From positions 1 through 64,000 of the IMG/VR virus record IMGVR_UViG_3300027770_000027: DNA of 64,000 nucleotides. The stretch is one strand, 5' to 3'. The position numbers and the translations under genes are program-made. This document shows positions 16,031-50,999 of the stretch, piece by piece. The notes beneath the pieces are model-generated. The model ran no database searches, was not told the origin of the DNA, and worked only from the letters and a program-made list of their open reading frames with translations. How positions within the stretch are numbered: the stretch's first letter is position 1; the number at the start of each line of letters is the position of its first letter.

Positions 16031-16567
16031 TTACTCCCAATACTGATAAGCAATAGTTGCTTGTTGTTCTACAACAGAACCAGCATCTGTAATATCAAGA
16101 GCGTAATCACCGAGGCTAACACAATAGGCACCGACCATTTTATAGGTTTTAATAGGCATCCCTTGTTTATCCATCAATGCTAACCAAACAGTTCCTAGAT
16201 CTCTTAATTCATATGCACCAGTACTTGTAGCGTCGTCAAAAGTTGCTCTTGTCCAATACTCCAATTTCTTTCTAATGGAAAGATCTTGAGGCATGCGGAA
16301 AGTAACATTCCACCCATCACTTCCGGGATAGTTAGCAGTTCCAGGTACATTGAATTTCATACCCATGAAAGGTACGGACACATTGTTTATAGCTCTTTTA
16401 GGAAGAGACGTAGCAGTGACATACACCAAATCATTTTCAGTGAATTGAATGCCGGCAGCACCGGTTTCAATACCCAGCACACGGAAAAGATTTTTACGTG
16501 CAAAATCCTTTCTAAATGCTGTTTGGTAGAAATTTTGAATATCTTGGTTGGAGAATACGTTAGCCAT
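16031..16567 (-). CDS. Tail tube protein (gp19-like)
   Basis: FARKNLFRV...ATSLPKRAINNVSVPFMG...PG...WNVTF...GAYCVSLGDYAL...QATIAYQYWE; directly after the sheath gene. Confidence 0.85.
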   Translation of the reverse strand: MANVFSNQDIQNFYQTAFRKDFARKNLFRVLGIETGAAGIQFTENDLVYVTATSLPKRAINNVSVPFMGMKFNVPGTANYPGSDGWNVTFRMPQDLSIRKKLEYWTRATFDDATSTGAYELRDLGTVWLALMDKQGMPIKTYKMVGAYCVSLGDYALDITDAGSVVEQQATIAYQYWE

Positions 16568-20582: not shown

Positions 20583-21065
20583 ATGGACGTGAATAAAATC
20601 TTTAACGAGGCCTTAGACGGACTCTGGAACAATACTAGTTATGGTGGCCAGAGTGACCCTCCTCGAAAAGATTTTAGTCCACAAAGTAGTGCTCAAGGGT
20701 ATAATTTTCCCTATCAAAAAAATAAAGGACCAGTATTTCCCCCGACTGCTCCTGGACCCGAGGCCCCAATAAATCTAGCATGGCCTCTTCAAACCATTAC
20801 ATATGATCTGGCAGACAGTTTTACCTATCTGTTAGCAGCCTCTAATAAGTTAGAAAATTGTAGACAATTAAATACGGCCATATCAAAGAAACAACGAAAG
20901 CAATTAGACTCTCTTCTTACTTTTTCTGCAAAAATTATGACGGCCATACAAAAATTAGATGCAGAGATTGGTTTAGTAGCAAATCTCTCTAATGAACAAC
21001 CCCCGATGAATCCTCATCAAGAAAGAGATCCGAATAGTGTTGCAGTTCCCTTGAAAAATATGTAA
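20583..21065 (+). CDS. Hypothetical protein
   Basis: 160-aa ORF in a tight operon; N-terminal IFNEA. Confidence 0.5.
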   Translation: MDVNKIFNEALDGLWNNTSYGGQSDPPRKDFSPQSSAQGYNFPYQKNKGPVFPPTAPGPEAPINLAWPLQTITYDLADSFTYLLAASNKLENCRQLNTAISKKQRKQLDSLLTFSAKIMTAIQKLDAEIGLVANLSNEQPPMNPHQERDPNSVAVPLKNM

Positions 21066-22925: not shown

Positions 22926-23846
22926 TTACTGATCGTTCCAGAATTTGCCTTGTCTTACATAGTCTGTTTTTTGTCCAGACTTACTCTGTAGAGGGGCAAT
23001 ATTTCCTTTGAATTCTGTGGGCTTACCATCTACCTTAGCACCTTTAGGAACTTGGGCCTTTCCCTTGGCAACATTAACAGCTCCTTTAACAACATTGTTT
23101 TTAGGATTTGTAAAGTTGTTGGCAAGACGTTCAAGATCTACTAAAGCAGTGCCAAGTTCTTCGGCGTCTACTTCTTCTTCAACTTTACTGTCTTCACCGT
23201 CTTCTTCACCACCTTCTTCACCTTCTTCTTCGTTAACGGTGTTTTCTCCAAAGGGATTACCAGTACCTTCTTCTCCTTCTTCGTCTTCTTCTCCTTCTTC
23301 GTCTTCTTCTCCTTCTTCTTCGCCACCTTCTTCATGTTCTTCTTCTTCTTCTTCTTCTTCAGATTCACCTTCTTCGTGTCCTGTGGCCTTTTCCAAAGCA
23401 GCTACGGCTGCTCTTAAAGCATGTAACACTTGAACCATGGGGTCTTCATCTTCTTCAGAGGCTTCTGCTTCTCCTTCACCGGATTCTGCATCACCGCTAA
23501 AATTTAAATCTAAATCACCAGCGGGGGCTCCACCAAAGTTAGGTTGGCTGTTGGCTTCTTCATCAGATTCCCAGTTTTCCTGAGCTAAAATTTTATTATA
23601 AAGAGAATCAAAGGGATTGGTTGAAGCATTAACTAAAGTTTTCTTAAGGGGTTTGGGAGAAGTTTCTGCCCCGTCTGAATTAAGTTCCTTAGAAGCTTCT
23701 TTAGGTTTGTCAACCGTTTCACCTTCTTGTTTGTTGATCTTCACCTTACCGAAATAAGGATCCTTTGAGGGAGTGATATCGGAACCTTTAACGGCTTGAC
23801 CTTCACTTTCGTTTAAGATTTTGTTGTAAGCATCTAGTAATGACAT
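22926..23846 (-). CDS. Highly acidic protein, possible prohead core/scaffold
   Basis: Central poly-Glu tract, basic C-terminus, two ILxE/LAQE motifs. Confidence 0.5.
   Translation of the reverse strand: MSLLDAYNKILNESEGQAVKGSDITPSKDPYFGKVKINKQEGETVDKPKEASKELNSDGAETSPKPLKKTLVNASTNPFDSLYNKILAQENWESDEEANSQPNFGGAPAGDLDLNFSGDAESGEGEAEASEEDEDPMVQVLHALRAAVAALEKATGHEEGESEEEEEEEEHEEGGEEEGEEDEEGEEDEEGEEGTGNPFGENTVNEEEGEEGGEEDGEDSKVEEEVDAEELGTALVDLERLANNFTNPKNNVVKGAVNVAKGKAQVPKGAKVDGKPTEFKGNIAPLQSKSGQKTDYVRQGKFWNDQ
23230..23370 (-). repeat. Coding low-complexity (GAA)n / 18-nt EEGEED repeat
   Basis: ttctccttcttcgtcttc is repeated tandemly within the Glu tract. Confidence 0.7.
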
Positions 23847-23885: not shown

Positions 23886-24683
23886 TCAATTGTTAGACAG
23901 AGTTTTTTCTGCTTCTAAAATCATTTTTGCTTCCTCTTTAAGGTCTAATGTGGGTATTAATTCATATTTATCTCCACCAATCCACACTATGTTAGATTCT
24001 TTTATTTTAATATTAGTATTGCGTTCAATTATAAGAGAATACAGATGTAACTGTAAACTATATTTAGTTATTGAATTATTGGATAGATGACTCAAAATTC
24101 CAGTCAAGTTATCTTTAGCCTTACTATGCACGTCCTTATTGGTCTTGTAGTCAAATACTATAATAGTTTGATCTTTTGTGTTAAAGGAAAGGTTGTCCAG
24201 AGTTCCACACACAGAGGATTCCTTATCTCCTATAACAAATTCTGAACGCAATATAACATGTTCTTGATTAAACCATTCATAAAAATTTAAAAAATGATTT
24301 ACATGATTAGCAACATCTTTGTAAAAGGTATCCTCATCTAGATAATCTGGATATTTTCTAATAAAACTTTTAATGACATTTTTATCCAGAGGACTTTTTT
24401 TTCTTAAAAAATAGTTTTCAATGTATGAATGTACCAATGTACCCTTTTCACAAGAATAATCTCTTTTGAAGTCCCACAACTGTCTTACTTCACCCACCGG
24501 CACTCCTTGGTTCTTGGCTACAATTCGAGAAATCTTATCTACATCAAAAGGTACTTCGTATTGTTTAATAATTCGAGATATAGATTTGCCAGAAGTGGTA
24601 TTCCCTATTTTATAGGAATGTCCTTCTTCATAAAAAAAGATATCCTTGAAGGCCAAATCCAATTCTATCAGGTCTTTTGTCAT
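23886..24683 (-). CDS. PD-(D/E)xK (Cas4/RecB-like) exonuclease
   Basis: KGTLVHSYIE, SEFVI, CGTLDNL, VFDYKT, YSLQLHLY; first ATG is at 24683. Confidence 0.8.
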   Translation of the reverse strand: MTKDLIELDLAFKDIFFYEEGHSYKIGNTTSGKSISRIIKQYEVPFDVDKISRIVAKNQGVPVGEVRQLWDFKRDYSCEKGTLVHSYIENYFLRKKSPLDKNVIKSFIRKYPDYLDEDTFYKDVANHVNHFLNFYEWFNQEHVILRSEFVIGDKESSVCGTLDNLSFNTKDQTIIVFDYKTNKDVHSKAKDNLTGILSHLSNNSITKYSLQLHLYSLIIERNTNIKIKESNIVWIGGDKYELIPTLDLKEEAKMILEAEKTLSNN

Positions 24684-24727
24684 TATGTTTTCATTATAGA
24701 TCTCTTTTTTAAAAATGCTCTTTTTGC

Positions 24728-24762
24728 TTGACAAATTCTTTAAAACCTGTGATAATTATAAT
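24728..24762 (+). promoter_or_regulatory. Sigma70-like promoter 6 nt from the ATG
   Basis: TTGACA-17 nt-GATAAT-tataat-ATG(24763). Confidence 0.7.
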
Positions 24763-25539: not shown

Positions 25540-27795
25540 ATGAGTGATAAAATTCTTCACGTTAAAAAGCGAGACGGTACACTAGTCCCGTTTCAAGTAG
25601 AAAATATTAATAAAGTTATCAAGTGGGCTGTGGACGGTATTACAGGTGTAAGTGTTTCAGATATTGAAATAAATACAAAGCTCAATCTTGTGGACGGCAT
25701 TTCTACTAAAGAAATTCACAAAGTTTTAATAGAATCTACCATTAATCTTTTTAATGAGGAAAATCCTAATTATCAATGGGTAGCATCTCGCCTATTAACT
25801 TATCAATTACGCAAAGATGTATGGGGAGGCAAAAATCCTCCGAGACTTTATGATTTTATTACACTTAATACTGAACGTAAGGTATATCATCCCGAGATCC
25901 TCCTTGCTTATTCTAAAACAGAAATAGATAAATTAGATGATAAAATTTCTCATAATAGAGATTATGATTTTACCTTTTCTGGAATAAAACAATTATGTGA
26001 TAAATATTTGATCCAAAATCGTAAGTCTAAAGAGATTTTTGAGACCCCTCAGTTTGCGTATATGTTGGCAGCAATGGTTAGTTACATTAACTATCCCGTT
26101 GAAACTCGCTTACAGTACGTTAAAAGAGCCTATGACAGATTCAGCAAATTTAAAATCAATCTCCCGACACCTCAAATGGCAGGAATTAGAGGATTGCTCA
26201 AACAATACGCCTCATGCTGTCTCATTGATGTGGACGATACTAAAGAATCCATTTTCAGCTCTAATACTGCTGCTGGCTTTGCTACTACCCAAAGATATGG
26301 CATCGGATTAAATTTTGGGAGAATTCGGGGTATTGGTACTGAAATTAAAAACGGCAGTGTCATTCATACGGGCATCATTCCCTTTCTCAAAGTATTTGAA
26401 GCCACTGTAAAGAGCTGTCAACAAAATGGTATTCGAGGTGGTGGAGCCACTGTTAATTTTCCTTTCTGGCATTATGAAATTGAAGATGTATTGGTTCTTA
26501 AAAACAATGGAGGAACAGAAGATAATAGAGTTCGTAAAGTTGATTATGTAATTCAATTTTCAAAATTATTTTATGAGAGATTCATGAGAAATGAATTCAT
26601 CACTTTGTTTTCTCCACATGAGGTTCCTGATCTGACAGAAGCTTTTGGACTTCCTCATTTTGATGAATTGTACGAAAAATATGAAAAGGATAAAAGTATT
26701 CGTTACAAGCGCAAGATCAAAGCAACCACTTTGATGTCACAATTTGTTAAAGAAAGAACAGAGACTGGAAGAATTTATGTAATGAATATAGATCACTGTA
26801 ATGAGCATGGATCTTTTGAGGATCGAGTTTGTATGACCAATCTTTGTGTTGAGGTTACTCATCCTACTAAGCCTATTCAACATATTGATGATCCGGATGC
26901 AGAAATTGGTATTTGTGTATTATCTGCTATTAACGTATTGGAAATTAAGGACGATCAGGACTTGGTAGACACCTGTGACATTATTGTTCGTATGTTAGAT
27001 GAATTGATTGATTATCAAGAATATTTTACAAAAGCCGCAGAGAACTTTACCAAAAAACGTAGAAGCCTTGGAGTTGGTATTACCAATTTAGCAGCATTGC
27101 TAGCTAAGAACAATCTCAAATACACAGATGTAGACGCTCCAAATTTTGTAGATGCGTTAATGGAAAAGATTCAATATAACCTTATTTCCGCCTCAGTTGA
27201 TTTGGCCGCTGAAAAGGGTGTGTGTGAAAAATTTAACAATACAAAATATTCAAAAGGTATTTTACCCATTGACACATATAAGAAGAAAATAGATGCGGTT
27301 GTTACTCGTAAACCCACATTAGATTGGGAATCTTTGAGACAGAGGATTATTACAACCGGAATGAGACACTCAACACTTACGGCATTAATGCCTTGTGAAT
27401 CTAGTTCTGTAATTCAAAATACTACAAACGGAATTGAACCACCCCGGTCTCTATTAACATATAAGGGATCAAAGGCAAATTCTGTGCCGGTACTTGTACC
27501 CAATTATAGCACTTGTAAAAATAAATATACTTTACAATTTGATATGCTTAATAATATGGGTTATATCAATATCGTAGCAGCCCTTCAAAAATGGGTAGAT
27601 ATGTCTATTTCTGCAAATCTTTATTACAATTATGAACACTATCCAAACAAAGCATTGCCGGATGCTTTGTTAATTAAAGAATTGTTATATGCATACAGCA
27701 TGGGTGTAAAGACTTTATATTATAGCAACACCTATGATGGAGACAAACAATCTGCAACTGATCAAGGATGTTCAAGTGGTGCTTGTGCAATTTAA
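25540..27795 (+). CDS. nrdA: Ribonucleotide reductase class Ia alpha subunit with ATP-cone
   Basis: VKKRDG ATP-cone, PTPQMAG, ASCCLI, TNLCVE, CVLS, LMPCESSS, KTLYY, C-terminal CSSGAC. Confidence 0.98.
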   Translation: MSDKILHVKKRDGTLVPFQVENINKVIKWAVDGITGVSVSDIEINTKLNLVDGISTKEIHKVLIESTINLFNEENPNYQWVASRLLTYQLRKDVWGGKNPPRLYDFITLNTERKVYHPEILLAYSKTEIDKLDDKISHNRDYDFTFSGIKQLCDKYLIQNRKSKEIFETPQFAYMLAAMVSYINYPVETRLQYVKRAYDRFSKFKINLPTPQMAGIRGLLKQYASCCLIDVDDTKESIFSSNTAAGFATTQRYGIGLNFGRIRGIGTEIKNGSVIHTGIIPFLKVFEATVKSCQQNGIRGGGATVNFPFWHYEIEDVLVLKNNGGTEDNRVRKVDYVIQFSKLFYERFMRNEFITLFSPHEVPDLTEAFGLPHFDELYEKYEKDKSIRYKRKIKATTLMSQFVKERTETGRIYVMNIDHCNEHGSFEDRVCMTNLCVEVTHPTKPIQHIDDPDAEIGICVLSAINVLEIKDDQDLVDTCDIIVRMLDELIDYQEYFTKAAENFTKKRRSLGVGITNLAALLAKNNLKYTDVDAPNFVDALMEKIQYNLISASVDLAAEKGVCEKFNNTKYSKGILPIDTYKKKIDAVVTRKPTLDWESLRQRIITTGMRHSTLTALMPCESSSVIQNTTNGIEPPRSLLTYKGSKANSVPVLVPNYSTCKNKYTLQFDMLNNMGYINIVAALQKWVDMSISANLYYNYEHYPNKALPDALLIKELLYAYSMGVKTLYYSNTYDGDKQSATDQGCSSGACAI

Positions 27796-30502: not shown

Positions 30503-30868
30503 TTAAACTGCTGGTGGTGGCTGAGTAGAAGCATCTGGAGCTTTGTCTTCGGCTTTTTTTGTCAACTTAATATCAAGAGACGGATTGTTTTTAAGCATTG
30601 CGAGAGCATAGTTGTTTGCTCCTTTTTTCCAATCAAATGCTTTTGGTTGGCCTTGTTGCTTAAATACTTTGCCATTGATTAATAGGTACCACGGACCTCT
30701 ATCATGATCTCTAAAACGCGCGGCTTCTTTTTTACCACCTGGGTCATCTTGATAATCATCATATCCTCCACCCAAAGCATTTCCGTCTGCGTCATGATAT
30801 TTGTCATAACGACTTTGACCAAACCTTGATTCCTTTAATATCTGATTGACTGCTTTATCGAAGTTCAT
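30503..30868 (-). CDS. Hypothetical protein, possible internal head protein
   Basis: MNFDKAVNQILKES N-terminus. Confidence 0.5.
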   Translation of the reverse strand: MNFDKAVNQILKESRFGQSRYDKYHDADGNALGGGYDDYQDDPGGKKEAARFRDHDRGPWYLLINGKVFKQQGQPKAFDWKKGANNYALAMLKNNPSLDIKLTKKAEDKAPDASTQPPPAV

Positions 30869-30872: not shown

Positions 30873-31427
30873 TTATTTATCTCTCAACACACCAATGTAT
30901 GGCAAATTTCTATAAAGACCATTATAGTCTAAACCGTACCCAACTATAAATTCATTTTCTATATCAAAAGCTTTATAGTCTGCTTCTATTTCTATAGATC
31001 TTTTTACCTTTTTATTTAACATTACACAGGTTTTAACTTCTTTAGCTCCATTGTTTTCCATGGCTCTTTTAAGAGTGGACATGGTTAATCCCGAGTCTAA
31101 GATGTCATCAACTAATAAAATATTTTTACCATGACAGAAAGAAAGATCTTGAGAATTGTATACCACTAGACCAGTACTTTCTTTTCCTTGATAACTAGAA
31201 ACTTTAAGAGATACTAAATCAATATCTATTGTCATTTCTATAATTAAATTTGCTGCAAAGATTAAACTACCTTCTAATAGATAGACTACTGTTAATTCTT
31301 TGCCGTGATAATCTCTGCTAATTTGTCTGCCCAAAGATTGACTTTTACCAAGAATTACCTGCTTATTAAATAAAATCCGCTCTATATCTGGATGCACAAA
31401 AACTCCTGTGTTTAAATCTATAGCCAT
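30873..31427 (-). CDS. hpt: Hypoxanthine phosphoribosyltransferase
   Basis: LLEGSLIFAANL, VSSYQG..STG, PRPP-binding LLVDDILDSGLT, FIVGYGLDYNGLYRNLPYIG. Confidence 0.93.
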   Translation of the reverse strand: MAIDLNTGVFVHPDIERILFNKQVILGKSQSLGRQISRDYHGKELTVVYLLEGSLIFAANLIIEMTIDIDLVSLKVSSYQGKESTGLVVYNSQDLSFCHGKNILLVDDILDSGLTMSTLKRAMENNGAKEVKTCVMLNKKVKRSIEIEADYKAFDIENEFIVGYGLDYNGLYRNLPYIGVLRDK

Positions 31428-31463: not shown

Positions 31464-31628
31464 CTATTTCATTCTCAAGTCGTTTTTACTTATTATTTCA
31501 GGTTTTGAATTTTTAGTGGCCTTAACCTTATATAAGTCAGGAGTGACTTCTATAACATAAACAATTTGACCAAATGCTAGTGTTGGATGTGTTTTGATAC
31601 AAACAACACCTTGTGGATAGTTATTCAT
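31464..31628 (-). CDS. 54-aa hypothetical protein (below ORF-track cutoff)
   Basis: Hand translation MNNYPQGVVCIKTHPTLAFGQIVYVIEVTPDLYKVKATKNSKPEIISKNDLRMK; overlaps the upstream stop. Confidence 0.45.
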   Translation of the reverse strand: MNNYPQGVVCIKTHPTLAFGQIVYVIEVTPDLYKVKATKNSKPEIISKNDLRMK

Positions 31629-31803
31629 TTAAAGTATTTCCTATTAAACTAATAAAAAAATTAGTAGACTCTTTAGAATTTATTTCTATTGCAGCCCTTT
31701 GAGCCAAAGCTTTCTTTTTAGATAAAGATTTTTTACTAAAACATTTGCCAGAAGGCTTACACACTTTGTATCCCTTTCCCTTTTTTCTTATTTTGTATGG
31801 CAT
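31621..31803 (-). CDS. Small basic protein
   Basis: MPYKIRKKGKGYKVCKPSGKCFSKK...; GATAAGTA upstream. Confidence 0.55.
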   Translation of the reverse strand: MPYKIRKKGKGYKVCKPSGKCFSKKSLSKKKALAQRAAIEINSKESTNFFISLIGNTLNE

Positions 31804-31844
31804 AACTATACTTATCTTTTCTTTCTCTAGACTAAATAGATTAT

Positions 31845-34547
31845 ATGAATTTTAGGGAATTTTTTACAGAGGCTGGTAAGATCTTGTCCAAACAGGGTAT
31901 AGAACTATCTAGAGTAAACAAGCAAGACTTTTTAACAGCCAAAGCAAAATTAAACCCTATTCTTCAAAGGGCTGGGTTGACTGCTGGGTGGACTGCCGGT
32001 GGTGCGGGGAGTTTTGATCCAGAACACCCATATGGTGGTGGTGGCAGAGATGACTCTGGAGATATAGACATTTTAATAGATCCTGTAGAATTAATTCAAA
32101 AATTTCCTAAAGACATTGCAGAATACGTAAAAGAATTCAACGCAAGAGCCAAAACAGAAGGTAAAAAACCTATAGGTGATGTAGCTTTGAATAATGCTTT
32201 AGCAATACCTGCCAAGAAAAGTGAACTACAAATAAGTGCTAGTAAATGGGAGCTAGCAAAATATATGTCTCAAAATGGTTACGAAACTACTCCAGGAACT
32301 TTGACGTTACAATATTCTGTAAACGGAAAAAATCATTCTGTAGATTTAATTTTAAGACCCAAAAGTGCCTGGGAGTTACACACTCACGACTTTACAAAAG
32401 ATGCTGGAATGAGAGGAAGTGATCTTTGGTTAAAGATTTATCCTCTCTTGGCTAAGTTAGCTAGTAAAACAAAACTTCCACCAGATCCAAAAACTGGAGA
32501 AGAAAAGGGCAATTTACAATTTAGTCCAGAAAGGGGAGTAGTAGATAGAAATACCAATGAAGTGATAACTTCCAATAAAAATGAGATAGCAAAACTTTTA
32601 TTAGGACCAGATGCATCTGCTGTAGATTTAGCTAGTCTTTCTGGCATTAAAAATAAATTAATGAATCAACCCGAAAAATGGAATGCAATCAAAGAATTTT
32701 ATCCAATTAAAAATGAAAGCATGGACTTAGGAGTTTTAATGGAAGGCATTGACCATCCAGAGGATAATATTATTAATAACGGATATGAAGGAGCCGAACA
32801 GGCATTTAAACAAATGTCTTCTCTGGTCAAAAATAGTAAGACAGTTACCATTAAATGGGATGGTTTTCCAGCAATTATTTTTGGGTGGAAAGAAATTCCT
32901 TCTAAAAATAATCCAAACGGTCAATTTTTGTTTGTAGACAAACACATGTTTGATAAAATGGCTAAGAGTAAACTAGAGTTTACATCTATAGAAGATTATG
33001 ACAAAGGTCGCGGAGCCAATAGACAAAGCCTATGGGAAGCCGCAGCAATGATGGTCCCTACAATGAAAAAAATTGTTCCCATGACTCAAGATCAATACTT
33101 TTTCGGAGATCTTATGTGGTCTGGAATGCCTAAGATTCAAAACGGATATTATGTATTTGAACCCAACACCGTAAAGTATCAGGTCAAAATTGACTCTGAC
33201 TTGGGAAACACTATAGGCAAGAGTGTAGGTGGTATAGCCATACACACCTTTATACCATCTATGGGCGCGGAGGATAGACCGTTGAAGGGATTGCAGGGAT
33301 TAAAACAAAACAATGGAATAACTTTCTTAGTTGGGGAAATTAAAGAAAAACCAAAAATTGCTCTGTCTACAGACCAGTTATCTCAAACTCAAGAAATTCT
33401 TAACTCAAATAAACATGTTGTCAAACAATTTGTGGGTGATCTTAAAACGTTAAAATCTGCAGTTGTTTTATCCAGCATGTCGCCGTTTATTACTTCGATG
33501 TTAAGAGACAATGATATAGCATCTGATATAGTTCCTAGATTTTTAACATTTCTTAAAACTAGATTATCTGAAGGACAGTCTATAAAATTATTAGGCATTA
33601 ATAAAGACGGATGGCTTTATAAAGAAGGTGCTCGCGGTTTAATAGGAATTTGGTCTATATGGGCGGCTTTAACTGAATTAAAACTTAACATTAAAAAGCA
33701 AATAGACCTTCAACAAACCGGTCTTCCTGTACAGGCTCGGATAGGCGAAGAAGATTCTCATGAAGGATATGTTTTTGGATCCGGAGCTAATAAATTAAAA
33801 CTTATAGATCGACTAGGATTTAGTAAAGCAAATTTTGCCAAAAATAATGTTGCTGGAGAAGATGTTTCTTCAAAATTAAATATGCCCGCAGCTTCATTTT
33901 GTTTTGGTCGAATGAATCCACCAACTGTGGGTCACAAAGCTTTGATGCAAAAAACTATCGAAAAGGGTGGTACTAATTCTTTTATATTTTTAAGTAATAC
34001 TCAAAATTCAAAAAAAGACCCACTAAATCCAGATATTAAATCTCAATTTGTAAAATTAATTTATCCAGAATTTGCTCCACATGTTGTTGATGAGAAAGTA
34101 TTAAATCCGATTTATGCTGCAAATTATCTATATGCTAAAGGTTTTAGAAATTTAATTTTTATTGCTGGCTCTGATAGATTGGGTGATAATCAAGGTAGTC
34201 TTGAAAAATTATTGACTAGTTGGAACAGTGGGGCTATTAGAACCAAAGATACTAATTTTGGCCCACAAGGAAGAGAACAAGTGGCTTTAAGATTTGTTAG
34301 CAGTGGAGACAGAGATCCAGATGCTACCGAAGGAGACGTAAGTGGTATATCTGCTTCTTTAGCGAGAAAGTTAGCAACTGAAGGCAATGAACAAGGATTT
34401 TATAAAGCCACAGGAGTTTCTTCTAATCTAGTAGTTGCTGGTAAAAATCTCTATCAAGCTGTAAGAGAAGGAATGGGACTTTCAACTGTTAAACCACCCG
34501 TATCTGAAAGTATCATTAGTTTCAAAGAATTTCTCTTTAAAACTTAA
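31845..34547 (+). CDS. Three-domain nucleotidyltransferase fusion (Pol-beta-like NTase + ligase-fold/DUF6267-like + HxGH cytidylyl/adenylyltransferase)
   Basis: GS(55-56)...DID(73-75); KWDG(337), GDL(421), EGY(640), KLKLID(650); FGRMNPPTVGH(687-697), AGSDR, ISAS..R. Confidence 0.8.
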   Translation: MNFREFFTEAGKILSKQGIELSRVNKQDFLTAKAKLNPILQRAGLTAGWTAGGAGSFDPEHPYGGGGRDDSGDIDILIDPVELIQKFPKDIAEYVKEFNARAKTEGKKPIGDVALNNALAIPAKKSELQISASKWELAKYMSQNGYETTPGTLTLQYSVNGKNHSVDLILRPKSAWELHTHDFTKDAGMRGSDLWLKIYPLLAKLASKTKLPPDPKTGEEKGNLQFSPERGVVDRNTNEVITSNKNEIAKLLLGPDASAVDLASLSGIKNKLMNQPEKWNAIKEFYPIKNESMDLGVLMEGIDHPEDNIINNGYEGAEQAFKQMSSLVKNSKTVTIKWDGFPAIIFGWKEIPSKNNPNGQFLFVDKHMFDKMAKSKLEFTSIEDYDKGRGANRQSLWEAAAMMVPTMKKIVPMTQDQYFFGDLMWSGMPKIQNGYYVFEPNTVKYQVKIDSDLGNTIGKSVGGIAIHTFIPSMGAEDRPLKGLQGLKQNNGITFLVGEIKEKPKIALSTDQLSQTQEILNSNKHVVKQFVGDLKTLKSAVVLSSMSPFITSMLRDNDIASDIVPRFLTFLKTRLSEGQSIKLLGINKDGWLYKEGARGLIGIWSIWAALTELKLNIKKQIDLQQTGLPVQARIGEEDSHEGYVFGSGANKLKLIDRLGFSKANFAKNNVAGEDVSSKLNMPAASFCFGRMNPPTVGHKALMQKTIEKGGTNSFIFLSNTQNSKKDPLNPDIKSQFVKLIYPEFAPHVVDEKVLNPIYAANYLYAKGFRNLIFIAGSDRLGDNQGSLEKLLTSWNSGAIRTKDTNFGPQGREQVALRFVSSGDRDPDATEGDVSGISASLARKLATEGNEQGFYKATGVSSNLVVAGKNLYQAVREGMGLSTVKPPVSESIISFKEFLFKT

Positions 34548-36157: not shown

Positions 36158-36730
36158 TTAAAAGGGCATTAAGCCTCGTATTTTTAAAAATACATATAAG
36201 CCAATAGCCATCATTAATAGGCCTATAATTACATTTCGCTTCAACAAAGCAAGTTGTTTGTCCTTTATCTCTAATACTAGATTATCATAATCTCTCAACA
36301 ATTGAGATTTTGCATCTCTTTGTTCTACTAGAGCTTTATAAACTTCTTCTTTTTCTTTCTGCAGATTTTCAAATTCTGTTTTTAATTGTTCTGCATTTTC
36401 CTTTATTTCTAAAAGTTTTCTATACTCATCAGACCCAACAACAACAATTTGCATGCCTTTAAGAGAAGGTGGAACTACTATAACATTTTTACCTATATCT
36501 GAAGAGGTTGCCTTAGAAACAATGGGTTTGATTAATATAGGTTCTTTAGGTGGATCTACTAAAGTCTTGGCTTGTTTGGCATATTGATCTGCCAGATCTA
36601 TTCTACCTAGATCTATAGAATCACTGGAGGCGTATACAGCCCTTGATAACGGCTCAGAATCTTTGGGAATATATCTTGTAGGTGCACAAGAAGTTAACAT
36701 ACAAACTAGCAATAAAAAAATCCTCTTCAT
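36158..36730 (-). CDS. Putative unimolecular spanin
   Basis: Lipobox LTS-C15, Ala at +2, coiled coil, C-terminal TM NVIIGLLMMAIGLYVFL. Confidence 0.65.
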   Translation of the reverse strand: MKRIFLLLVCMLTSCAPTRYIPKDSEPLSRAVYASSDSIDLGRIDLADQYAKQAKTLVDPPKEPILIKPIVSKATSSDIGKNVIVVPPSLKGMQIVVVGSDEYRKLLEIKENAEQLKTEFENLQKEKEEVYKALVEQRDAKSQLLRDYDNLVLEIKDKQLALLKRNVIIGLLMMAIGLYVFLKIRGLMPF

Positions 36731-39410: not shown

Positions 39411-39835
39411 TGGTGGAGGCGAGGGGAGTTGAACCCCTGTCCTGAAAACTTAGACTTTAGCGTCTACAATCATATTTTGCTAACATTATAGGGACAAAGG
39501 GTTGTTAGCTAGTTTTTAGTCTACCTGCTGGCGCGAAGTCTACCAGCTACTCTCGGCTTGTTTTTATTGAGCTTCACGATCTTACTCAAACCTACTTAGG
39601 TTACTCCAGAAATTTTAATAGGATCCATTTCTGTTTGTTAGGCTGCGAGCTCGTACATCTCTTCTTCTGCGAGGTAATCCTCGAAGTTGTTGATGATGTG
39701 GGTTGCTTCAGCTAAGAGTGCTTCTGTATTATCAGTTGCATTTATTTGTTTGTCCAGAGATTTTAACGAGGCCAACCAGACTTCCTCGGATTGCAACTAA
39801 AGTTTTCAGCGCTCAGTCGAAACCAATGCGCCCCC
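39411..39835 (-). ncRNA. ssrA: tmRNA
   Basis: 5' GGGGGCG pairs with 3' CGCCUCC-ACCA (G3.U70); GGUUUCGAC; T-arm GGGGUUCAACUCCCC; resume context AUAAAU-GCA; tag ORF 39739-39638 ending LAA*. Confidence 0.95.
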
Positions 39836-45774: not shown

Positions 45775-47040
45775 TTACCCTATGATAACGGCCTTATAGG
45801 CATTAGTTGTTGGTATAAAGCTAAAAGATACGACTGTAATGTATGGATCTTTGTTTGCAATGGTGGGAATTACAGTTTGACCACTAGAGTTATCATATAT
45901 ATTAACTACTCTATCAATAGAACTAATAGTGTGAGAAATAGAGAATATTCTATTTATTCCGTCTCCTATAAGAGCTACTTGCTTACTGCTTATGTTAAGA
46001 GCAGTTACCAAGGCGTATGTAGTATTCCAGCGAGCAGATAAGCTATTAACAGTTGCTTCGACCGATGCAATCTTGGGTTGATATACAGCTGAGGATAACA
46101 CCCCATCCAGATGAGATCCGTCCCCGTAATGAGTACCAGATAAACTAGCCGCATTTACATACTGGCTAAAGACTCCATAAGAAGCAGAAACTGAATTAGA
46201 TATAGAAACATCTGACGTGGTAATTTGTTTATCAAAATATACATTGTCGGTAGCACTAACAGTGCCTATCACTGTTAGGGTCTTATTAGGAGCGGATGTA
46301 TTGATGCCAATAACTCCAGCTGGTATTGTTCCGTTAGTAAATTTGGCGTTTCCTACATGCAACGCTTCTATACCATCAGCATCATAGAAACTTGCAATGT
46401 TTCCAGGACCAAGTCCTTGTTGAACATACAAGGCAGGACCGTCCCCTAGATTGATAACACTTAAAGAACTGGTATTAGTGAAGACTGTGGTGTTATTAAA
46501 GGTGGTGGTTCCGGTTGCGGTTAAGTTTCCTACAACAGTAACATTGCCAACAATAATATCTGTATGAAGAGCATATGTTGATAGATTGTTATAAACCGTG
46601 GCATTGTCTACAAATAAATTTTTTGCAGATATTTGATTAGTGGCAATAACACCACCAGCTTTAAGAGATAATACATCTAATTCTGCACCTCTTAATAATG
46701 CTGCAAGGTCACTAGCAGATCCTAAAGGAGATCCGTTTAGTACAATTGAAGACGCACTCAGTCCATCAAAAATTGCATTTTTACCAGACAGTAGTCCTGT
46801 AAGAGTTCCTCCAGTTAATGAAAGCTTGGAAGGATCTATACCAGTAACATTAGTAACAAATGTACCGTCCCCATAAAAATAATTGAAATGGGCATTATCT
46901 CCCGACAATCCAGCAAACCCCGTAAGTTGGCCCCCAGAAAGAGGTAGAACATTAGTTAGTCCACTGCCGTCTCCGTATATAATAGAATTGGAGGATACAG
47001 ACCCAGAAACTGTAAGAGCATCTAAAAATTGAACAGCCAT
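45775..47040 (-). CDS. Tail fibre-like protein
   Basis: LPLSGGQLTG, LSLTGGTLTG, IGINTSAPNKTLTVIG fibre repeats. Confidence 0.65.
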   Translation of the reverse strand: MAVQFLDALTVSGSVSSNSIIYGDGSGLTNVLPLSGGQLTGFAGLSGDNAHFNYFYGDGTFVTNVTGIDPSKLSLTGGTLTGLLSGKNAIFDGLSASSIVLNGSPLGSASDLAALLRGAELDVLSLKAGGVIATNQISAKNLFVDNATVYNNLSTYALHTDIIVGNVTVVGNLTATGTTTFNNTTVFTNTSSLSVINLGDGPALYVQQGLGPGNIASFYDADGIEALHVGNAKFTNGTIPAGVIGINTSAPNKTLTVIGTVSATDNVYFDKQITTSDVSISNSVSASYGVFSQYVNAASLSGTHYGDGSHLDGVLSSAVYQPKIASVEATVNSLSARWNTTYALVTALNISSKQVALIGDGINRIFSISHTISSIDRVVNIYDNSSGQTVIPTIANKDPYITVVSFSFIPTTNAYKAVIIG

Positions 47041-49130: not shown

Positions 49131-49727
49131 ATGAAGGGGTTTGTAAAGCTCTGGCTAACTGTAATAACCTTTTTTGGATTATTGCTATTTGGTTCTCAAT
49201 TAAGTTTGGGAGCCACACCATTAAGAGAATCTCAATTGATACGAAGGGTTTACCTAGATGTTCTAGGGTTTCCTCCAAGTCCTAAAGAGTTAGATTGGTA
49301 TTTAACATATAACTCTAAATCGTATGAAACAGCCGTGGACTGGGTGATTAATAGTCACGGTGCTTACTTTCAAAATTTAGATCCGGTTGAAATGAAGAGG
49401 TATTTGTGTTCTATAGAGTATAAAACAACTCCTCAAATTAAAATAATACCTTTTCAATTAGAAATGATAATCAAATACCAGTGTGGTGATCTTAGTCTTT
49501 CTCTAAATGACGCAAAAATCAAATTAACAAAAGATGCAGTTGGTTTTGGAGAGGGCAATGTTTTAGACACTATAGATTATATCGCAGAAAGTCTAATGGC
49601 TAGAGTTTCTCATGCAGAAGAAGCTACTAGTTTGTTAAAAATATATAAAAAATACCCCTCTGAAGCAGAGGGGTATTTTAACGTTGTGTCTGAAATAATG
49701 ACTTATAAAGATTATCTTTACAAGTAA
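49131..49727 (+). CDS. Exported protein with a DUF1549/DUF1553-like (PSCyt2/PSD1) motif
   Basis: Signal-peptide-like N-terminus; QLIRRVYLDVLGFPPSPKEL; LMARVSHAEE. Confidence 0.6.
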   Translation: MKGFVKLWLTVITFFGLLLFGSQLSLGATPLRESQLIRRVYLDVLGFPPSPKELDWYLTYNSKSYETAVDWVINSHGAYFQNLDPVEMKRYLCSIEYKTTPQIKIIPFQLEMIIKYQCGDLSLSLNDAKIKLTKDAVGFGEGNVLDTIDYIAESLMARVSHAEEATSLLKIYKKYPSEAEGYFNVVSEIMTYKDYLYK

Positions 49728-50836: not shown

Positions 50837-50913
50837 TGGTGCAATCGGCGGGATTCGAACCCGCGACCAACAGATTAGAAATCTGTTGCTCTATCCAGCT
50901 GAGCTACGATTGC
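50837..50913 (-). tRNA. tRNA-Arg(UCU)
   Basis: GCAATCG...ACAGA-TT-TCT-AA-TCTGT...GGTTCGAATCCC...CGATTGC-ACCA. Confidence 0.95.
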
Positions 50914-50923
50914 TTGTTAAAAA

Positions 50924-50998
50924 TGGAGCGGGTAGAGGGAATTGAACCCTCCTATCTAGTTTGGAAGACTAGGGCATTAGCCACTATGCTATACCCGC
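50924..50998 (-). tRNA. tRNA-Gly(UCC)
   Basis: GCGGGTA...CTAGT-CT-TCC-AA-ACTAG...GGGTTCAATTCCC...TACCCGC-TCCA. Confidence 0.95.
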
Positions 50999-50999
50999 A

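What the first reader, a model, noticed from the sequence alone, without database searches (positions are those of the whole stretch)
31845..34547. Putatively encapsidated polyprotein joining three unrelated nucleotidyltransferase folds
Seen: domain 1 (aa ~40-285) has Pol-beta-superfamily GS...DID plus a third Asp in SVDL. Domain 2 (~300-665) has covalent-NTase/ligase motifs I KWDG (K337), III GDL, IV EGY and V KLKL. Domain 3 (~680-880) has the HxGH-class FGRMNPPTVGH, AGSDR and ISAS..R. The protein starts with CTS-like MNFREFFTEA, has NE-S and LME-G exactly at the domain 1/2 junction, and ends with VSE-SIISFKEFL. It is a solitary plus-strand gene with a late motif. Known: these folds catalyse template-independent nucleotide addition, adenylation/ligation and NMN/phospho-substrate adenylyl- or cytidylyl-transfer; T4 gp21 cuts after Glu. 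Inference: a packaged, protease-processed toolkit injected with the DNA that repairs or caps RNA ends (tRNA/tmRNA are encoded nearby), restores NAD+, or modifies host defence proteins or signals. This is the strongest candidate for an undescribed system here.
Basis: partly seen in the sequence, partly recalled or inferred. Interest (0 to 1): 0.82.

Follow-up and report, generated by a model that had tools for sequence, protein, structure and literature searches.

The report
Fused polymerase-ligase-nucleotidyltransferase phage enzyme
One 900-residue phage gene joins a DNA-polymerase-beta-like enzyme, a probable RNA-ligase-like enzyme of a so far unnamed family (DUF6267) and a small nucleotide-transferring enzyme. 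The same three parts occur together, as neighbouring genes or in other fusion orders, in many large aquatic phages, which points to an undescribed break-repair kit that may travel inside the virus particle.

Summary

- **Domain 1 (aa ~10-288):** models at pLDDT 93.8. Its top 34 PDB fold matches are all family-X DNA polymerases (lambda, beta, mu).
- **Domain 2 (aa 301-666):** this is Pfam DUF6267. No significant fold or profile match was found, but three weak lines (motif order, first non-family Foldseek hits, nearest language-model families) all point to RNA ligases.
- **Domain 3 (aa ~683-880):** a cytidylyltransferase-like, NMNAT-class fold.

The main new result is linkage. Standalone domain-1 genes sit directly upstream of DUF6267-cytidylyltransferase genes in 4 of 4 loci examined. 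In addition, 28 of 145 domain-1 relatives carry DUF6267 in the same chain, in both orders.

My reading is a fill-and-seal repair module for nucleic-acid breaks. Packaging is plausible but unproven. The leader resembles the T4 capsid-targeting sequence, [LIV]xE sites flank the modules, and two cyanophage virion proteomes detected leader-bearing homologues of domain 3. The "late motif" is not diagnostic. No prohead protease lies in the window. Substrates are unknown.

The parts
31832..31839 (+). Upstream motif CTAAATAG, 12 nt before the ATG. It is a recurrent gene-start signal of this phage.
   Evidence: TAAATA lies at -11 to -13 in 11 of 58 genes (about 0.13 expected). These include the terminase large subunit, and the motif also occurs at -22 of NrdA. 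It is not specific for late genes.
31845..34547 (+). Whole gene: 900 codons plus stop.
   Evidence: Orthologues are 57-72% identical over the full length. Codon usage is native: r = 0.90 against 15 large genes, GC3 0.226.
31845..31871 (+). N-terminal leader MNFREFFTE (aa 1-9), ending in a candidate F-T-E|A cleavage site.
   Evidence: Family consensus is MNFKEFFxE|[AGS]G. The first ten residues have low model confidence (mean pLDDT 52). The leader resembles T4 IPI MKTFKEF, IPII/III MKTYQEFIAE|A and gp24 MAKINELLRE|S, all read from NC_000866.
31872..32708 (+). Domain 1 (aa 10-288): family-X-polymerase-like nucleotidyltransferase (palm plus thumb). Catalytic candidates are D73, D75 and D167.
   Evidence: The AF2 model has pLDDT 93.8. 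Foldseek against PDB gives family-X polymerases at all of ranks 1-34, with probability about 1.0, E from 1.3e-3, TM 0.39-0.42 and about 260 aligned columns. G52, D73, D75, D167, H179, G191 and R235 are nearly invariant in 88 relatives.
32709..32744 (+). Flexible junction (aa 289-300) ending V-L-M-E300|G301. This is a candidate internal cleavage site and the remnant of the gene boundary.
   Evidence: pLDDT is low at the end of model 1 and the start of model 2. In the two-gene versions the DUF6267 gene starts here, with its own leader followed by [IL]xE|GIDHPED.
32745..33842 (+). Domain 2 (aa 301-666): DUF6267, a probable lysine-nucleotidyl (RNA-ligase-like) transferase. The K337 codon is at 32853-32855.
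   Evidence: Pfam PF19782 matches at E = 8e-35. K337-W-D-G, G421-D, H639-E-G-Y-V-F-G, K652 and D655-R are invariant in 108 sequences. The model has pLDDT 87.5. RNA ligases are the first non-family fold hits but are not significant. With DUF6267 and cytidylyltransferase clusters excluded, 96 of the 100 nearest named language-model clusters carry RNA-ligase families.
33369..33716 (+). Helical insert within domain 2 (aa ~509-624), between candidate ligase motifs IIIa and IV.
   Evidence: Secondary structure of the model. The insert attracts coiled-coil noise in Foldseek.
33891..34484 (+). Domain 3 (aa ~683-880): cytidylyltransferase-like (HIGH/TxGH class, NMNAT-like) nucleotidyltransferase.
   Evidence: PHROG 'cytidyltransferase' families match at 2.8e-29 and 4.2e-19. 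Pfam PF01467 is below cut-off for this protein (15.6-17.5 bits against 21) but hits 32 of 49 orthologous domains, best 1e-5. Structure matches to viral CTP_transf_like clusters reach TM 0.77.
34485..34544 (+). C-terminal tail (aa 881-900): ...P-V-S-E888|S-I-I-S-F-K-E-F-L-F-K-T, a candidate C-terminal propeptide that repeats the N-terminal FKEF motif.
   Evidence: P885, E888, S892 and F893 are conserved in the 20 orthologues. The tail is absent from two-domain relatives, which end at ...REGMG(L/I). T4 Alt is processed at both ends, at ITE-6 and LTE-619 (PMC5694885).

Best explanation
The gene encodes a fusion of three enzymes that act on nucleic-acid ends.

1. A minimal family-X (Pol-beta/lambda-like) nucleotidyltransferase, which adds nucleotides at a 3' end or fills a short gap.
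2. DUF6267, a divergent member of the lysine-nucleotidyltransferase (ligase) superfamily closest to Rnl2/Rnl5-type RNA ligases. It would be charged with AMP on K337 and seal the resulting nick.
3. A HIGH-class nucleotidyltransferase, which most likely makes or recycles a nucleotide cofactor or activated intermediate for the other two.

The fusion arose by loss of the stop codon between two translationally coupled genes, a Pol-X-like gene and a DUF6267-cytidylyltransferase gene. These genes are neighbours in related large phages.

The working model is a fill-and-seal break-repair or end-joining kit. It would be analogous to bacterial LigD (polymerase plus ligase using ribonucleotide 3' ends) or to the Pol X plus ligase pair of African swine fever virus.

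The N-terminal leader and the [LIV]xE sites suggest a T4-Alt-like route. The protein would be carried into the prohead and trimmed by the prohead protease into a Pol-X piece and a ligase-transferase piece, then injected with the DNA. I rate that step at about 0.4.

Shown: the three modules, their conserved catalytic residues, their recurrent genetic linkage and the conservation of the leader.

Inferred: ligase chemistry, substrates, the role of domain 3, packaging and cleavage.
For: **Domain identities**
- Domain 1: fold; catalytic triad conserved in 88 relatives.
- Domain 2. The candidate ligase motifs K-x-D-G ... G-D ... F-E-P-N ... E-G-hhh ... K-x-K occur in the canonical order.
- The only enzyme-like PDB hit is the Naegleria RNA ligase 6vt3/6vt5.
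- The first non-family BFVD hits are RNA ligases of Tunisvirus (E 0.047), ASFV and Marseillevirus.
- 96 of the 100 nearest named language-model clusters carry RNA-ligase families: PF09414, alone or with other ligase families, or PF17720.
- Domain 3.

**Linkage**
- Standalone Pol-X-like genes lie immediately upstream of DUF6267-CT genes in L008, L009, L010/L011 and L016. In the first three the two genes overlap by 4 nt.
- 28 of 145 representative relatives of domain 1 carry DUF6267 in the same chain. Of these, 21 have domain 1 first, 6 have DUF6267 first and 1 is preceded by a cytidylyltransferase-like stretch.
- DUF6267 and the cytidyltransferase are adjacent genes in T4-like cyanophages.
- P0065 further fuses DUF5661 and an NT5C nucleotidase. 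These are separate neighbours, next to an Endonuclease_NS gene, in L016.

**Context**
- The surrounding block is nucleotide metabolism. The sister contig carries gp32 and a DnaB-like helicase. The terminase is T4-like.

**Packaging**
- Leader similarity to T4 propeptides.
- The [ILVM]xE|G rule.
- The background rate of the leader pattern is about 1% of ORFs, against 91% of DUF6267-first proteins.
- Virion proteomes of S-SZBM1 and S-CREM2 contain homologues that begin MRFRQFIIEA and MKNFSSFLTEA.
Against: **Domain assignments**
- Domain 2 has no significant fold match: best relevant hits are E 0.047, probability 0.28 (BFVD) and E 1.3 (PDB).
- Domain 2 has no Pfam ligase hit in 108 members and no HHalign signal against T4 Rnl1, Rnl2 or DNA ligase.
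- The IV-to-V motif spacing (10-12 residues) is shorter than in the ligases I know. A 115-residue helical insert interrupts the core.
- Domain 1 matches Pol X only at fold level (TM about 0.4). No sequence profile hit to Pol X appears in PDB or Pfam. It lacks the 8-kDa lyase domain.
- No known ligase system needs a HIGH-class transferase, so the role of domain 3 is a guess.

**Packaging**
- No prohead protease or capsid gene lies in the window.
- The proteome detections rest on 2-3 peptides, and the S-CREM2 authors themselves warn of carry-over.
- The DUF6267 homologue of S-SZBM1 was not in its virion table.
- hxE-GGN is so common at the start of domain-1 relatives, even after 4-5-residue 'leaders', that the Glu there may be structural.
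- T4 lysozyme also begins MNIFEML, so the pattern can be an ordinary helix.
Confidence: 0.5

Rival explanations
1. The chemistry is the same, but the enzyme is cytoplasmic and not packaged. It would serve replication or repair, for example as the nick-sealing ligase (with a gap-filling partner) of phages that lack a T4 gp30-type DNA ligase. The terminal motifs would be ordinary helices or partner-binding peptides, for example for the sliding clamp.
For: - The gene sits in a nucleotide-metabolism block in the window and in the orthologue locus.
- In cyanophages, DUF6267 and the cytidyltransferase lie between UvsX-gp41-MazG and the gp61 primase.
- DUF6267 is extremely common there: 7995 of the 8000 candidates scored had E <= 1e-5.
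- Synechococcus phages are missing from the top genera that carry a T4-type ligase. The review PMC2993671 notes that quasi-core replication genes, gp30 among them, are absent from some marine cyanophages.
- Cyanophage DUF6267 has no leader (0 of 120) and was not in the S-SZBM1 virion table.
- T4 lysozyme shows that the N-terminal pattern can be structural.
Against: - The leader is kept at the extreme N-terminus whichever domain follows: Pol-X-like, DUF6267 or the cytidylyltransferase.
- The leader is dispensable for the DUF6267 fold.
- It is followed by an [ILVM]xE|G site only when something precedes the core.
- Leader-bearing homologues of domain 3 were found in two virion proteomes.
Confidence: 0.3
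2. An RNA-end repair or editing-like kit. The Pol-beta-type transferase would add nucleotides to RNA 3' ends and the Rnl2/Rnl5-like ligase would reseal cleaved RNAs such as tRNAs cut by host anticodon nucleases. This would be comparable to T4 Pnkp plus Rnl1, or to the TUTase plus REL ligase pair of kinetoplastid editing.
For: - The nearest families for domain 2 are RNA ligases, not DNA ligases.
- The best, non-significant, PDB sequence hit of domain 1 is the terminal uridylyltransferase Tailor, aligned at the catalytic motif.
- The cytidylyltransferase-like domain is fused in other phages to AAA_33/Zeta-type kinases and NTP_transf_2.
- The phage carries tRNAs and a tmRNA.
Against: - The fold of domain 1 matches templated family-X DNA polymerases far better than TUTases or CCA-adding enzymes: probability 1.0 against 0.1-0.25.
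- No kinase or phosphatase end-healing module is present in this protein.
- The tRNA and tmRNA genes are 5-16 kb away and not linked.
- No anticodon-nuclease context was found.
Confidence: 0.15
3. A nucleotide or NAD+ metabolism or counter-defence enzyme. Domain 3 would act as an NMN adenylyltransferase that rebuilds NAD+, and the other two domains would make or destroy signalling nucleotides, not act on polynucleotides.
For: - Some cyanophage records annotate the homologue as NMNAT (PMC10665884).
- The weak NCBIfam hit is to nicotinate/nicotinamide nucleotide adenylyltransferase.
- A phosphoribosyltransferase gene lies about 400 bp upstream.
Against: - The NMNAT hit covers only the TxGH motif (E 0.012, 15.7 bits against a cut-off of 112).
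- No Nampt or Nudix partner was seen.
- cGAS-like and other signalling transferases rank far below Pol X for domain 1.
- The persistent fusion with a ligase-like and a polymerase-like domain is not explained.
Confidence: 0.05

Closest known systems
Family X DNA polymerases (Pol beta, lambda, mu; minimal Pol X of African swine fever virus)
   Same: - The palm carries the G-[GS] ... D-x-D ... D triad.
- The thumb-like C-terminal subdomain matches.
- The top 34 Foldseek PDB hits are all of this family.
- From my own knowledge of the Pol beta sequence, not checked with a tool: SGDIDILI, VDLILRPK and RGSDLW resemble SGDMDVLL, IDIRLIPK and TGSDIF.
- Like ASFV Pol X, domain 1 lacks the 8-kDa and BRCT domains.
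   Different: - No sequence-profile match to Pol X families.
- TM is only about 0.4.
- An extra conserved H179-x-H-D motif is present.
- The N-terminal E-[AG]-G-[KN] motif is not a Pol X feature.
- Activity and template dependence are unknown.
Rnl2/Rnl5-type RNA ligases (Pfam PF09414; T4 Rnl2, Naegleria NgrRnl, Deinococcus DraRnl) within the ligase/capping-enzyme superfamily
   Same: - An invariant K-x-D-G lysine motif.
- Candidate motifs III, IIIa, IV (E-G-hhh) and V (K-x-K) in the canonical order.
- This family gives the first non-family structural hits and the nearest language-model families.
   Different: - No significant profile or fold match.
- A 115-residue helical insert is present.
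- An invariant N-terminal I-x-H-x-E-D motif and D365-K-H are unknown in ligases.
- The motif IV-V spacing is short.
Bacterial LigD (NHEJ: polymerase + ligase + phosphoesterase in one chain)
   Same: - The logic matches: a nucleotide-adding domain, a sealing domain and a third accessory catalytic domain are fused in variable order.
- From the literature as I recall it: the LigD ligase prefers a 3' ribonucleotide added by its polymerase. That would suit an RNA-ligase-like sealer.
   Different: - The LigD polymerase is an archaeo-eukaryotic primase fold, not Pol X.
- Its ligase is a canonical ATP-dependent DNA ligase.
- Its third domain is a phosphoesterase, not a HIGH-class transferase.
- No Ku partner was seen here.
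T4 Alt and internal proteins IPI-III (capsid-targeted, gp21-processed, injected proteins)
   Same: - A short N-terminal leader of the type M-x-x-[FY]-x-E-F-x-x-E|A.
- Candidate cleavage after Glu with a hydrophobic P3 residue at the N-terminus, and at the C-terminus as in Alt (ITE-6, LTE-619; PMC5694885).
- The protein is an enzyme, not a structural protein.
- The gene is scattered outside the head gene cluster.
   Different: - No sequence homology beyond the leader.
- Packaging, cleavage and the presence of a gp21-type protease in this phage are all untested.
- The leader may be partly structural.
Cyanomyovirus 'cytidyltransferase' (T4-GC_190) and its upstream hypothetical gene (T4-GC_71 = DUF6267)
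   Same: - Domains 2 and 3 are homologous to these genes: 27% identity, E 1e-20 and 1e-17 against S-SZBM1_141 and _140.
- The order is the same.
- Virion detection has been reported for the transferase.
   Different: - In cyanophages they are separate genes.
- No detectable Pol-X-like partner was found there.
- DUF6267 lacks the leader there.

Membership tests
Family X DNA polymerase | Pol-beta-superfamily palm with G-[GS], D-x-D and a third carboxylate | tested here: met
   G52/G55-S56, D73, D75 and D167 are invariant in the 20 orthologues. G52, D73, D75 and D167 are at least 90% conserved in 88 relatives.
Family X DNA polymerase | Overall palm plus thumb fold similar to solved Pol X structures | tested here: met
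   Foldseek against PDB: ranks 1-34 are all Pol lambda, beta or mu. Probability is about 1.0, E from 1.3e-3, about 260 aligned columns, but TM is only 0.36-0.42.
Family X DNA polymerase | Match to curated Pol X sequence models, or to PDB sequences | tested here: not met
   No Pfam or NCBIfam hit. A profile against PDB gives only Tailor TUTase at E 0.3-0.7.
Family X DNA polymerase | 8-kDa dRP-lyase and helix-hairpin-helix fingers domains | tested here: not met
   Only about 40 residues precede the palm, so this is a minimal form, as in ASFV Pol X (own knowledge).
Family X DNA polymerase | Template-directed DNA synthesis | not testable with these tools
   Needs an enzyme assay.
Ligase/capping lysine nucleotidyltransferases (RNA ligase PF09414 branch) | Motif I K-x-D-G with an invariant lysine | tested here: met
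   K337-W-D-G is invariant in 108 sequences and also present in the cyanophage homologue (VTVKWDG).
Ligase/capping lysine nucleotidyltransferases (RNA ligase PF09414 branch) | Motifs III, IIIa, IV and V in order with usual spacing | tested here: inconclusive
   Candidates FFGDLMW, YVFEPN, HEGYVFG and KLKLIDR occur in order and are invariant. A 115-residue insert lies between IIIa and IV, and the IV-V spacing is short.
Ligase/capping lysine nucleotidyltransferases (RNA ligase PF09414 branch) | Fold similarity to solved or predicted ligases | tested here: inconclusive
   PDB: NgrRnl at E 1.3-2, probability 0.09-0.16. BFVD: RNA ligases are the first non-family hits, at E 0.047-0.36, probability 0.09-0.28.
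Ligase/capping lysine nucleotidyltransferases (RNA ligase PF09414 branch) | Profile-level homology to ligase families | tested here: not met
   No ligase family appears among the Pfam hits of 108 members at E <= 10. HHalign against T4 Rnl1, Rnl2 and gp30 gives probability 0.1. The language-model neighbours are RNA-ligase clusters, but with scores of 0.71-0.78, which is a lead only.
Ligase/capping lysine nucleotidyltransferases (RNA ligase PF09414 branch) | Covalent enzyme-NMP intermediate and strand sealing | not testable with these tools
   Needs labelled-NTP self-nucleotidylation with a K337A control.
HIGH-signature nucleotidyltransferases (Pfam PF01467, NMNAT/PPAT/GCT class) | (H/T)-x-G-H and I-S-x-x-x-x-R motifs | tested here: met
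   P-P-T694-V-G-H697 and I835-S-A-S-L-A-R841 are conserved.
HIGH-signature nucleotidyltransferases (Pfam PF01467, NMNAT/PPAT/GCT class) | Curated family score | tested here: inconclusive
   This protein scores 15.6-17.5 bits against a cut-off of 21. 32 of 49 orthologous domains hit PF01467, best 9.7e-6. PHROG cytidyltransferase families match at 2.8e-29. Predicted-structure TM is 0.77 to viral CTP_transf_like clusters.
HIGH-signature nucleotidyltransferases (Pfam PF01467, NMNAT/PPAT/GCT class) | Substrate identity (NMN, glycerol-3-P, pantetheine-P or other) | not testable with these tools
   Only the TxGH stretch matches TIGR00482 NMNAT (E 0.012).
T4-type capsid-targeted, prohead-protease-processed internal proteins | N-terminal targeting leader followed by an [LI]-x-E cleavage site | tested here: inconclusive
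   MNFREFFTE|A compares with T4 MKTYQEFIAE|A, MKTFKEF and MAKINELLRE|S. The pattern occurs in about 1% of background ORFs against 91% of DUF6267-first proteins. However, hxE-GGN may be structural.
T4-type capsid-targeted, prohead-protease-processed internal proteins | The phage encodes a gp21-type protease and scaffold core | not tested
   None is in the window. The terminase and gp32 are T4-like, so one is expected elsewhere in the 227-kb genome.
T4-type capsid-targeted, prohead-protease-processed internal proteins | Presence and cleavage in virions | not testable with these tools
   The evidence is indirect. Domain-3 homologues S-SZBM1_140 (2 peptides) and S-CREM2 gp154 (3 peptides) appear in virion proteomes.

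The most novel reading that the evidence does not exclude
DUF6267 is an unrecognised ligase family. It is abundant in marine T4-like phages, which mostly lack a T4-type DNA ligase. Together with a minimal Pol X and a HIGH-class transferase it forms a virion-packaged, protease-processed end-joining or gap-repair kit that is injected with the genome. The kit would heal or circularise the incoming DNA before host nucleases act. This would be a phage counterpart of the virion-borne Pol X/ligase repair set of African swine fever virus and of LigD-type NHEJ.
Probability: 0.2. Interest if true: 0.85.

Novelty: new variant of a known kind. Interest (0 to 1): 0.62.

Why it matters
DUF6267 is one of the commonest unannotated genes of marine myoviruses: 7995 of the 8000 candidates scored had E <= 1e-5, and about 375 cultured Synechococcus phage records carry DUF6267 and/or its cytidyltransferase partner. 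My full-text search found no paper that mentions it.

A testable chemistry for DUF6267 (a K337-dependent ligase) and two obligate partners (a Pol-X-like transferase and the cytidylyltransferase) would annotate thousands of phage genes.

It could also explain how phages without a T4-type ligase seal DNA.

If the leader is a true capsid-targeting sequence, it would extend the T4 internal-protein paradigm to enzymes of a very different kind. It would also give a sequence rule for predicting injected proteins in uncultured phages.

Tried and rejected
- **Whole-protein and per-domain profile searches against PDB sequences.** These gave nothing useful.
- **HHalign of the DUF6267 profile against T4 Rnl1, Rnl2 and DNA ligase.** No signal. 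The profile has low diversity (Neff 2.3) and the templates were single sequences, so this is weak negative evidence.
- **Pfam scan of 108 DUF6267 domains at E <= 10.** No ligase family appeared.
- **Foldseek of domain 2 against PDB.** Long-helix noise dominated: Rad50, CorA.
- **Is the cyanophage gene upstream of DUF6267 a hidden Pol-X-like gene?** I tested S-MbCM7_152, S-RIM44 gp102 and S-SZBM1_142. BLAST found nothing. One weak profile hit appeared (E 9e-4 in a 12-sequence search). The three proteins do not align with each other and show no G-S/D-x-D motif. Rejected as unsupported.
- **tblastn of domain 1 against 50,697 cultured-phage records.** No match.
- **Search for T4 or cyanophage head genes in the window** (gp21, gp22, gp23, gp24, portal). 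None found. The weak gp21 hit falls in a nuclease-like ORF.
- **A recent foreign insertion.** Rejected: codon usage and GC are native and synteny is conserved.
- **Reading the upstream TAAATA motif as a T4 late promoter.** Rejected as a timing marker, because NrdA has it too and its distance to the ATG is fixed.
- **The [LIV]xE|GGN pattern of domain-1 relatives as proof of cleavage.** Downgraded, because 4-5-residue 'leaders' also carry it.

Full report
**What is there**

Window 31845-34547 (+) is an uninterrupted 900-codon ORF. It is the only + strand gene in a run of - strand genes. The upstream neighbour ends 41 nt before it, and the downstream neighbour overlaps its stop codon.

Its GC content (35.3%), GC3 (0.226) and codon usage (r = 0.90 against 15 large genes of the window) are native. 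The same isolated + orientation recurs in a 59%-identical orthologue locus, after the same block of NrdA, NrdB, dCMP deaminase, HNH and phosphoribosyltransferase.

The phage is an uncultured myovirus. Its window holds a tail sheath, a baseplate hub and a terminase that is 31-37% identical to T4-superfamily terminases. A sister contig carries a gp32-type single-strand-binding protein. No nucleotide-level relative exists among 50,697 cultured-phage records.

About 20 metagenomic clusters share the full three-domain architecture at 57-72% identity.

**Domain 1 (aa ~10-288)**

Pfam, NCBIfam and PDB sequence searches are silent. A profile search of 1.84 billion representatives found 147 relatives. 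These include standalone proteins of about 280-290 aa.

With an 88-sequence alignment, AlphaFold gives pLDDT 93.8. Foldseek against the PDB returns family-X DNA polymerases at every one of ranks 1-34: Pol lambda, beta and mu, with a Deinococcus Pol X entry lower down. Probability is about 1.0, E starts at 1.3e-3 and about 260 columns align. Terminal uridylyltransferases, CCA-adding enzymes and cGAS-like proteins come far behind.

G52, D73, D75, D167, H179, G191 and R235 are nearly invariant across the 88 relatives.

Caveats: TM-scores are only about 0.4, no sequence profile links the domain to Pol X, and the 8-kDa lyase domain is absent.

**Domain 2 (aa 301-666)**

This is Pfam DUF6267 (E = 8e-35). 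A full-text search found no paper that mentions the family.

In 108 sequences the following are invariant:
- K337-W-D-G
- D365-K-H
- G421-D
- H467-T
- H639-E-G-Y-V-F-G
- K652
- D655-R

The order K-x-D-G ... G-D ... F-E-P-N ... E-G-hhh ... K-x-K is that of ligase motifs I, III, IIIa, IV and V.

The AlphaFold model (pLDDT 87.5) has no significant PDB match. The only enzyme-like hits are the Naegleria RNA ligase (E 1.3-2). A 115-residue helical insert attracts coiled-coil noise.

Against predicted viral structures, the 14 significant hits are family members, among them an S-PM2 591-aa fusion and a PA5oct protein. The very next hit is an RNA ligase of Tunisvirus (E 0.047), followed closely by RNA ligases of ASFV and Marseillevirus.

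When DUF6267 and cytidylyltransferase clusters are excluded, 96 of the 100 nearest named protein-language-model clusters carry RNA-ligase families (PF09414, alone or with other ligase families, or PF17720), at sub-threshold scores of 0.71-0.78.

Against this, no ligase family appears in a Pfam scan of all 108 members. HHalign against T4 Rnl1, Rnl2 and DNA ligase is blank.

I read domain 2 as a probable (about 0.7), very divergent ligase-type lysine nucleotidyltransferase nearest to the Rnl2/Rnl5 branch. Membership is not proven.

**Domain 3 (aa ~683-880)**

- PHROG 'cytidyltransferase' families match at 2.8e-29 and 4.2e-19.
- Pfam PF01467 is just under its cut-off for this protein, but hits 32 of 49 orthologous domains.
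- Predicted-structure matches to viral CTP_transf_like clusters reach TM 0.77.
- T694-x-G-H697 and I835-S-x-x-x-x-R841 are conserved.

The substrate cannot be told. The NMNAT-model hit covers only the TxGH stretch.

In other phages this domain is fused to NTP_transf_2, AAA_33/Zeta-type kinases, PAP2, ATP-grasp and several DUFs.

**The main new result: the three modules are genetically locked together**

More than 100 clusters encode the DUF6267-cytidylyltransferase pair as one protein of about 600 aa, on contigs of up to 381 kb. Many carry further C-terminal modules.

In T4-like cyanophages the two are adjacent genes inside the replication block, between UvsX-gp41-MazG and the gp61 primase.

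Standalone domain-1 genes lie immediately upstream of a DUF6267-cytidylyltransferase gene in all four loci I could read:
- L008, L009 and L010/L011, where the two genes overlap by 4 nt
- L016, a 381-kb contig

Among 145 representative relatives of domain 1, 28 carry DUF6267 in the same chain. Of these, 21 have domain 1 first, 6 have DUF6267 first, and one has a cytidylyltransferase-like stretch ahead of both.

Independent fusions in both orders are the classic sign of enzymes that work on the same substrate. The window's protein is thus a stop-codon-loss fusion of a conserved, translationally coupled gene pair. The junction ...NESMDLGVLME|GIDHPED still shows the remnant of the second gene's start.

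**Mechanism I commit to**

A Pol-X-type enzyme next to a ligase-type enzyme is the fill-and-seal logic of short-patch repair and end joining. From established knowledge: Pol beta/lambda work with ligases in eukaryotes, Pol X with a ligase in ASFV, and polymerase plus ligase plus a third domain in bacterial LigD.

Because the sealing domain looks like an Rnl2/Rnl5-type RNA ligase, a LigD-like route is attractive. There the polymerase lays down ribonucleotides and the ligase seals a 3'-ribo nick. This is inference.

The role of the HIGH-class transferase is the weakest link. It might supply or recycle a nucleotide cofactor, or activate a 5'-phosphate. I know of no precedent.

An RNA-repair or editing-like reading (TUTase plus Rnl2-like ligase) remains possible. 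The fold of domain 1 fits templated DNA polymerases much better.

**Encapsidation and processing**

I read the T4 propeptides from NC_000866:
- IPII/IPIII: MKTYQEFIAE|A
- IPI: MKTFKEF...
- Alt: MELITE|LFDE
- gp24: MAKINELLRE|S

T4 internal proteins share only such a capsid-targeting sequence (PMC3012670). Alt is trimmed at both ends, at ITE-6 and LTE-619 (PMC5694885).

The window's protein begins MNFREFFTE|AGK (family consensus MNFKEFFxE|[AGS]G). Its first ten residues are poorly ordered in the model.

A strict version of the leader pattern occurs at these rates:

| Set | Matches |
|---|---|
| Three-domain proteins | 19 of 20 |
| DUF6267-first proteins | 89 of 98 |
| Other domain-1 relatives | 23 of 141 |
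| Cyanophage standalone DUF6267 | 0 of 120 |
| Background ORFs | about 1% |

In nearly all of the 118 leader-bearing or fused proteins, the four residues before the DUF6267 core are [ILVM]-x-E-[GS], with a freely varying second position. The leaderless cyanophage proteins have K-N-T there instead. That is what a cleavage site, as opposed to a structural motif, would look like.

The C-terminal add-on ...P-[LV]-x-E|S-F-K-E-F-F is absent from the two-domain relatives.

Two independent cyanophage virion proteomes list the cytidylyltransferase:
- S-SZBM1_140, with 2 peptides (PMC9146016)
- S-CREM2 gp154, with 3 peptides (PMC10665884)

I showed that both are homologues of domain 3 (E 1e-17 each). 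Both begin with a leader, MRFRQFIIEA... and MKNFSSFLTEA..., followed by a low-complexity linker. The leaderless DUF6267 of S-SZBM1 is not in that table.

Several points count against packaging:
- The detections are weak, and the S-CREM2 authors warn of carry-over.
- No prohead protease lies in the window.
- hxE-GGN opens most domain-1 relatives, even after 4-5 residues, so that Glu may be structural.
- T4 lysozyme also starts MNIFEML.

I put packaging of this protein at about 0.4.

**The 'late motif'**

CTAAATAG sits 12 nt before the ATG. TAAATA at -11 to -13 occurs in 11 of 58 genes against about 0.13 expected, so it is a real signal. It precedes the terminase but also NrdA (at -22). Its fixed distance to the start codon suggests very short or absent leaders, not a timing class. 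No sigma-70-like or terminator signal stands out.

**Comparison and novelty**

Each fold is known, and DUF6267 and the cyanophage 'cytidyltransferase' are catalogued. The following are new as far as the searched literature goes:
- The Pol-X-like identity of domain 1. It has no homologue detectable in cultured phages.
- The ligase-like reading of DUF6267.
- The three-way linkage.
- The leader/cleavage-site rule.

T4-type DNA ligase is found in 2645 phage records. Synechococcus phages are not among the ten commonest genera there, whereas about 375 of them carry DUF6267 and/or the cytidyltransferase. This makes DUF6267 a candidate for their missing ligase, which is a lead and not a result.

**Verdict**

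This is a new variant of known kinds of system, of moderate-to-high interest, chiefly because it gives an abundant unknown phage family a testable function.

Noticed in passing
window 22926-23846 (-): A 306-aa hyperacidic protein with long Glu runs. Its N-terminus is MSLLDAYNKILNE|S and it has an internal repeat LYNKILAQE|N. It looks like a scaffold or internal head protein with protease-type sites. No PHROG hit.
   Followed up: partly
window 30503-30868 (-) and 20583-21065 (+): Two further small proteins begin with leader-like N-termini ending [LI]xE|[AS]: MNFDKAVNQILKE|S and MDVNKIFNE|A. The first is conserved in the orthologue locus L015 as MKFDALVNKILNE|E. They may be other packaged proteins.
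   Followed up: partly
window-wide; e.g. 31832-31839, upstream of 6354-8231, 25540-27795, 16586-19129: There are two recurrent gene-start motifs. [AC]TAAATA[GA] sits 11-13 nt before the ATG of 11 of 58 genes (about 0.13 expected). GATAAGTA lies before the tail sheath, 16031-16567, 45775-47040, 49131-49727 and 31621-31803. The fixed spacing suggests near-leaderless mRNAs or a translation signal.
   Followed up: partly
window 39411-39835 (-); 50837-51073 (-): A phage-encoded tmRNA (tag ...EEEMYELAA) and a cluster of tRNA-Arg(TCT), tRNA-Gly(TCC) and tRNA-Trp(CCA).
   Followed up: no
window 23886-24734 (-): A 282-aa ORF with a ...VFDYKTNKD... motif that looks like a PD-(D/E)xK (Cas4/RecB-type) nuclease. 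It has no PHROG hit. It was the place of a spurious weak tblastn hit of T4 gp21.
   Followed up: no
window 30873-31427 (-): A type-I phosphoribosyltransferase (HPRT-like; LLVDDILDSG motif) lies about 400 bp upstream of the target, on the opposite strand. It is conserved in the orthologue locus (PF00156 in L015).
   Followed up: no
L010:1561-5924 and L011: A phage contig carries DnaJ and a ClpB-like chaperone. Next comes a 467-aa protein that also matches the domain-1 profile (E 2e-7), a possible second Pol-beta-type paralogue. It lies directly before the Pol-X-like gene and the DUF6267-cytidylyltransferase gene.
   Followed up: partly
L016:6126-13536; protein P0065: In a 381-kb contig, the Pol-X-like and DUF6267-cytidylyltransferase genes are followed by an NT5C nucleotidase, an Endonuclease_NS and a DUF5661/DUF6321 protein. 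P0065 (1308 aa) fuses the Pol-X-like part, DUF6267, the cytidylyltransferase, DUF5661 and NT5C into one chain. Another gene there starts MKITDLLTE|AKKPTPPK.
   Followed up: partly
proteins P0021-P0120 (C-terminal extensions): Many DUF6267-cytidylyltransferase proteins continue after a Pro/Ala/Gln/Lys-rich linker into further modules. These are often introduced by [LM]xE|[ST] (e.g. ...DLVE|SILRDK, ...SMNE|SKLKNK) or by internal leader-like strings (MKITEITE, RLLKEFTE). This is consistent with polyproteins built from leader-bearing genes.
   Followed up: partly
window 1-600; L013, L014: The window is the left end of JGI metagenome contig 3300027770 Ga0209086_10000004 (227,352 bp). A 137-kb sister contig continues with GTP cyclohydrolase I, a gp32-type SSB and a DnaB-like helicase.
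   Followed up: no
window 54554-55018 (-), 55020-55577 (-), 36158-36730 (-): Three small proteins have lipoprotein-type signal peptides (e.g. MKKILFLSLISLSMIAC...). They may be superinfection-exclusion or lysis-related lipoproteins.
   Followed up: no
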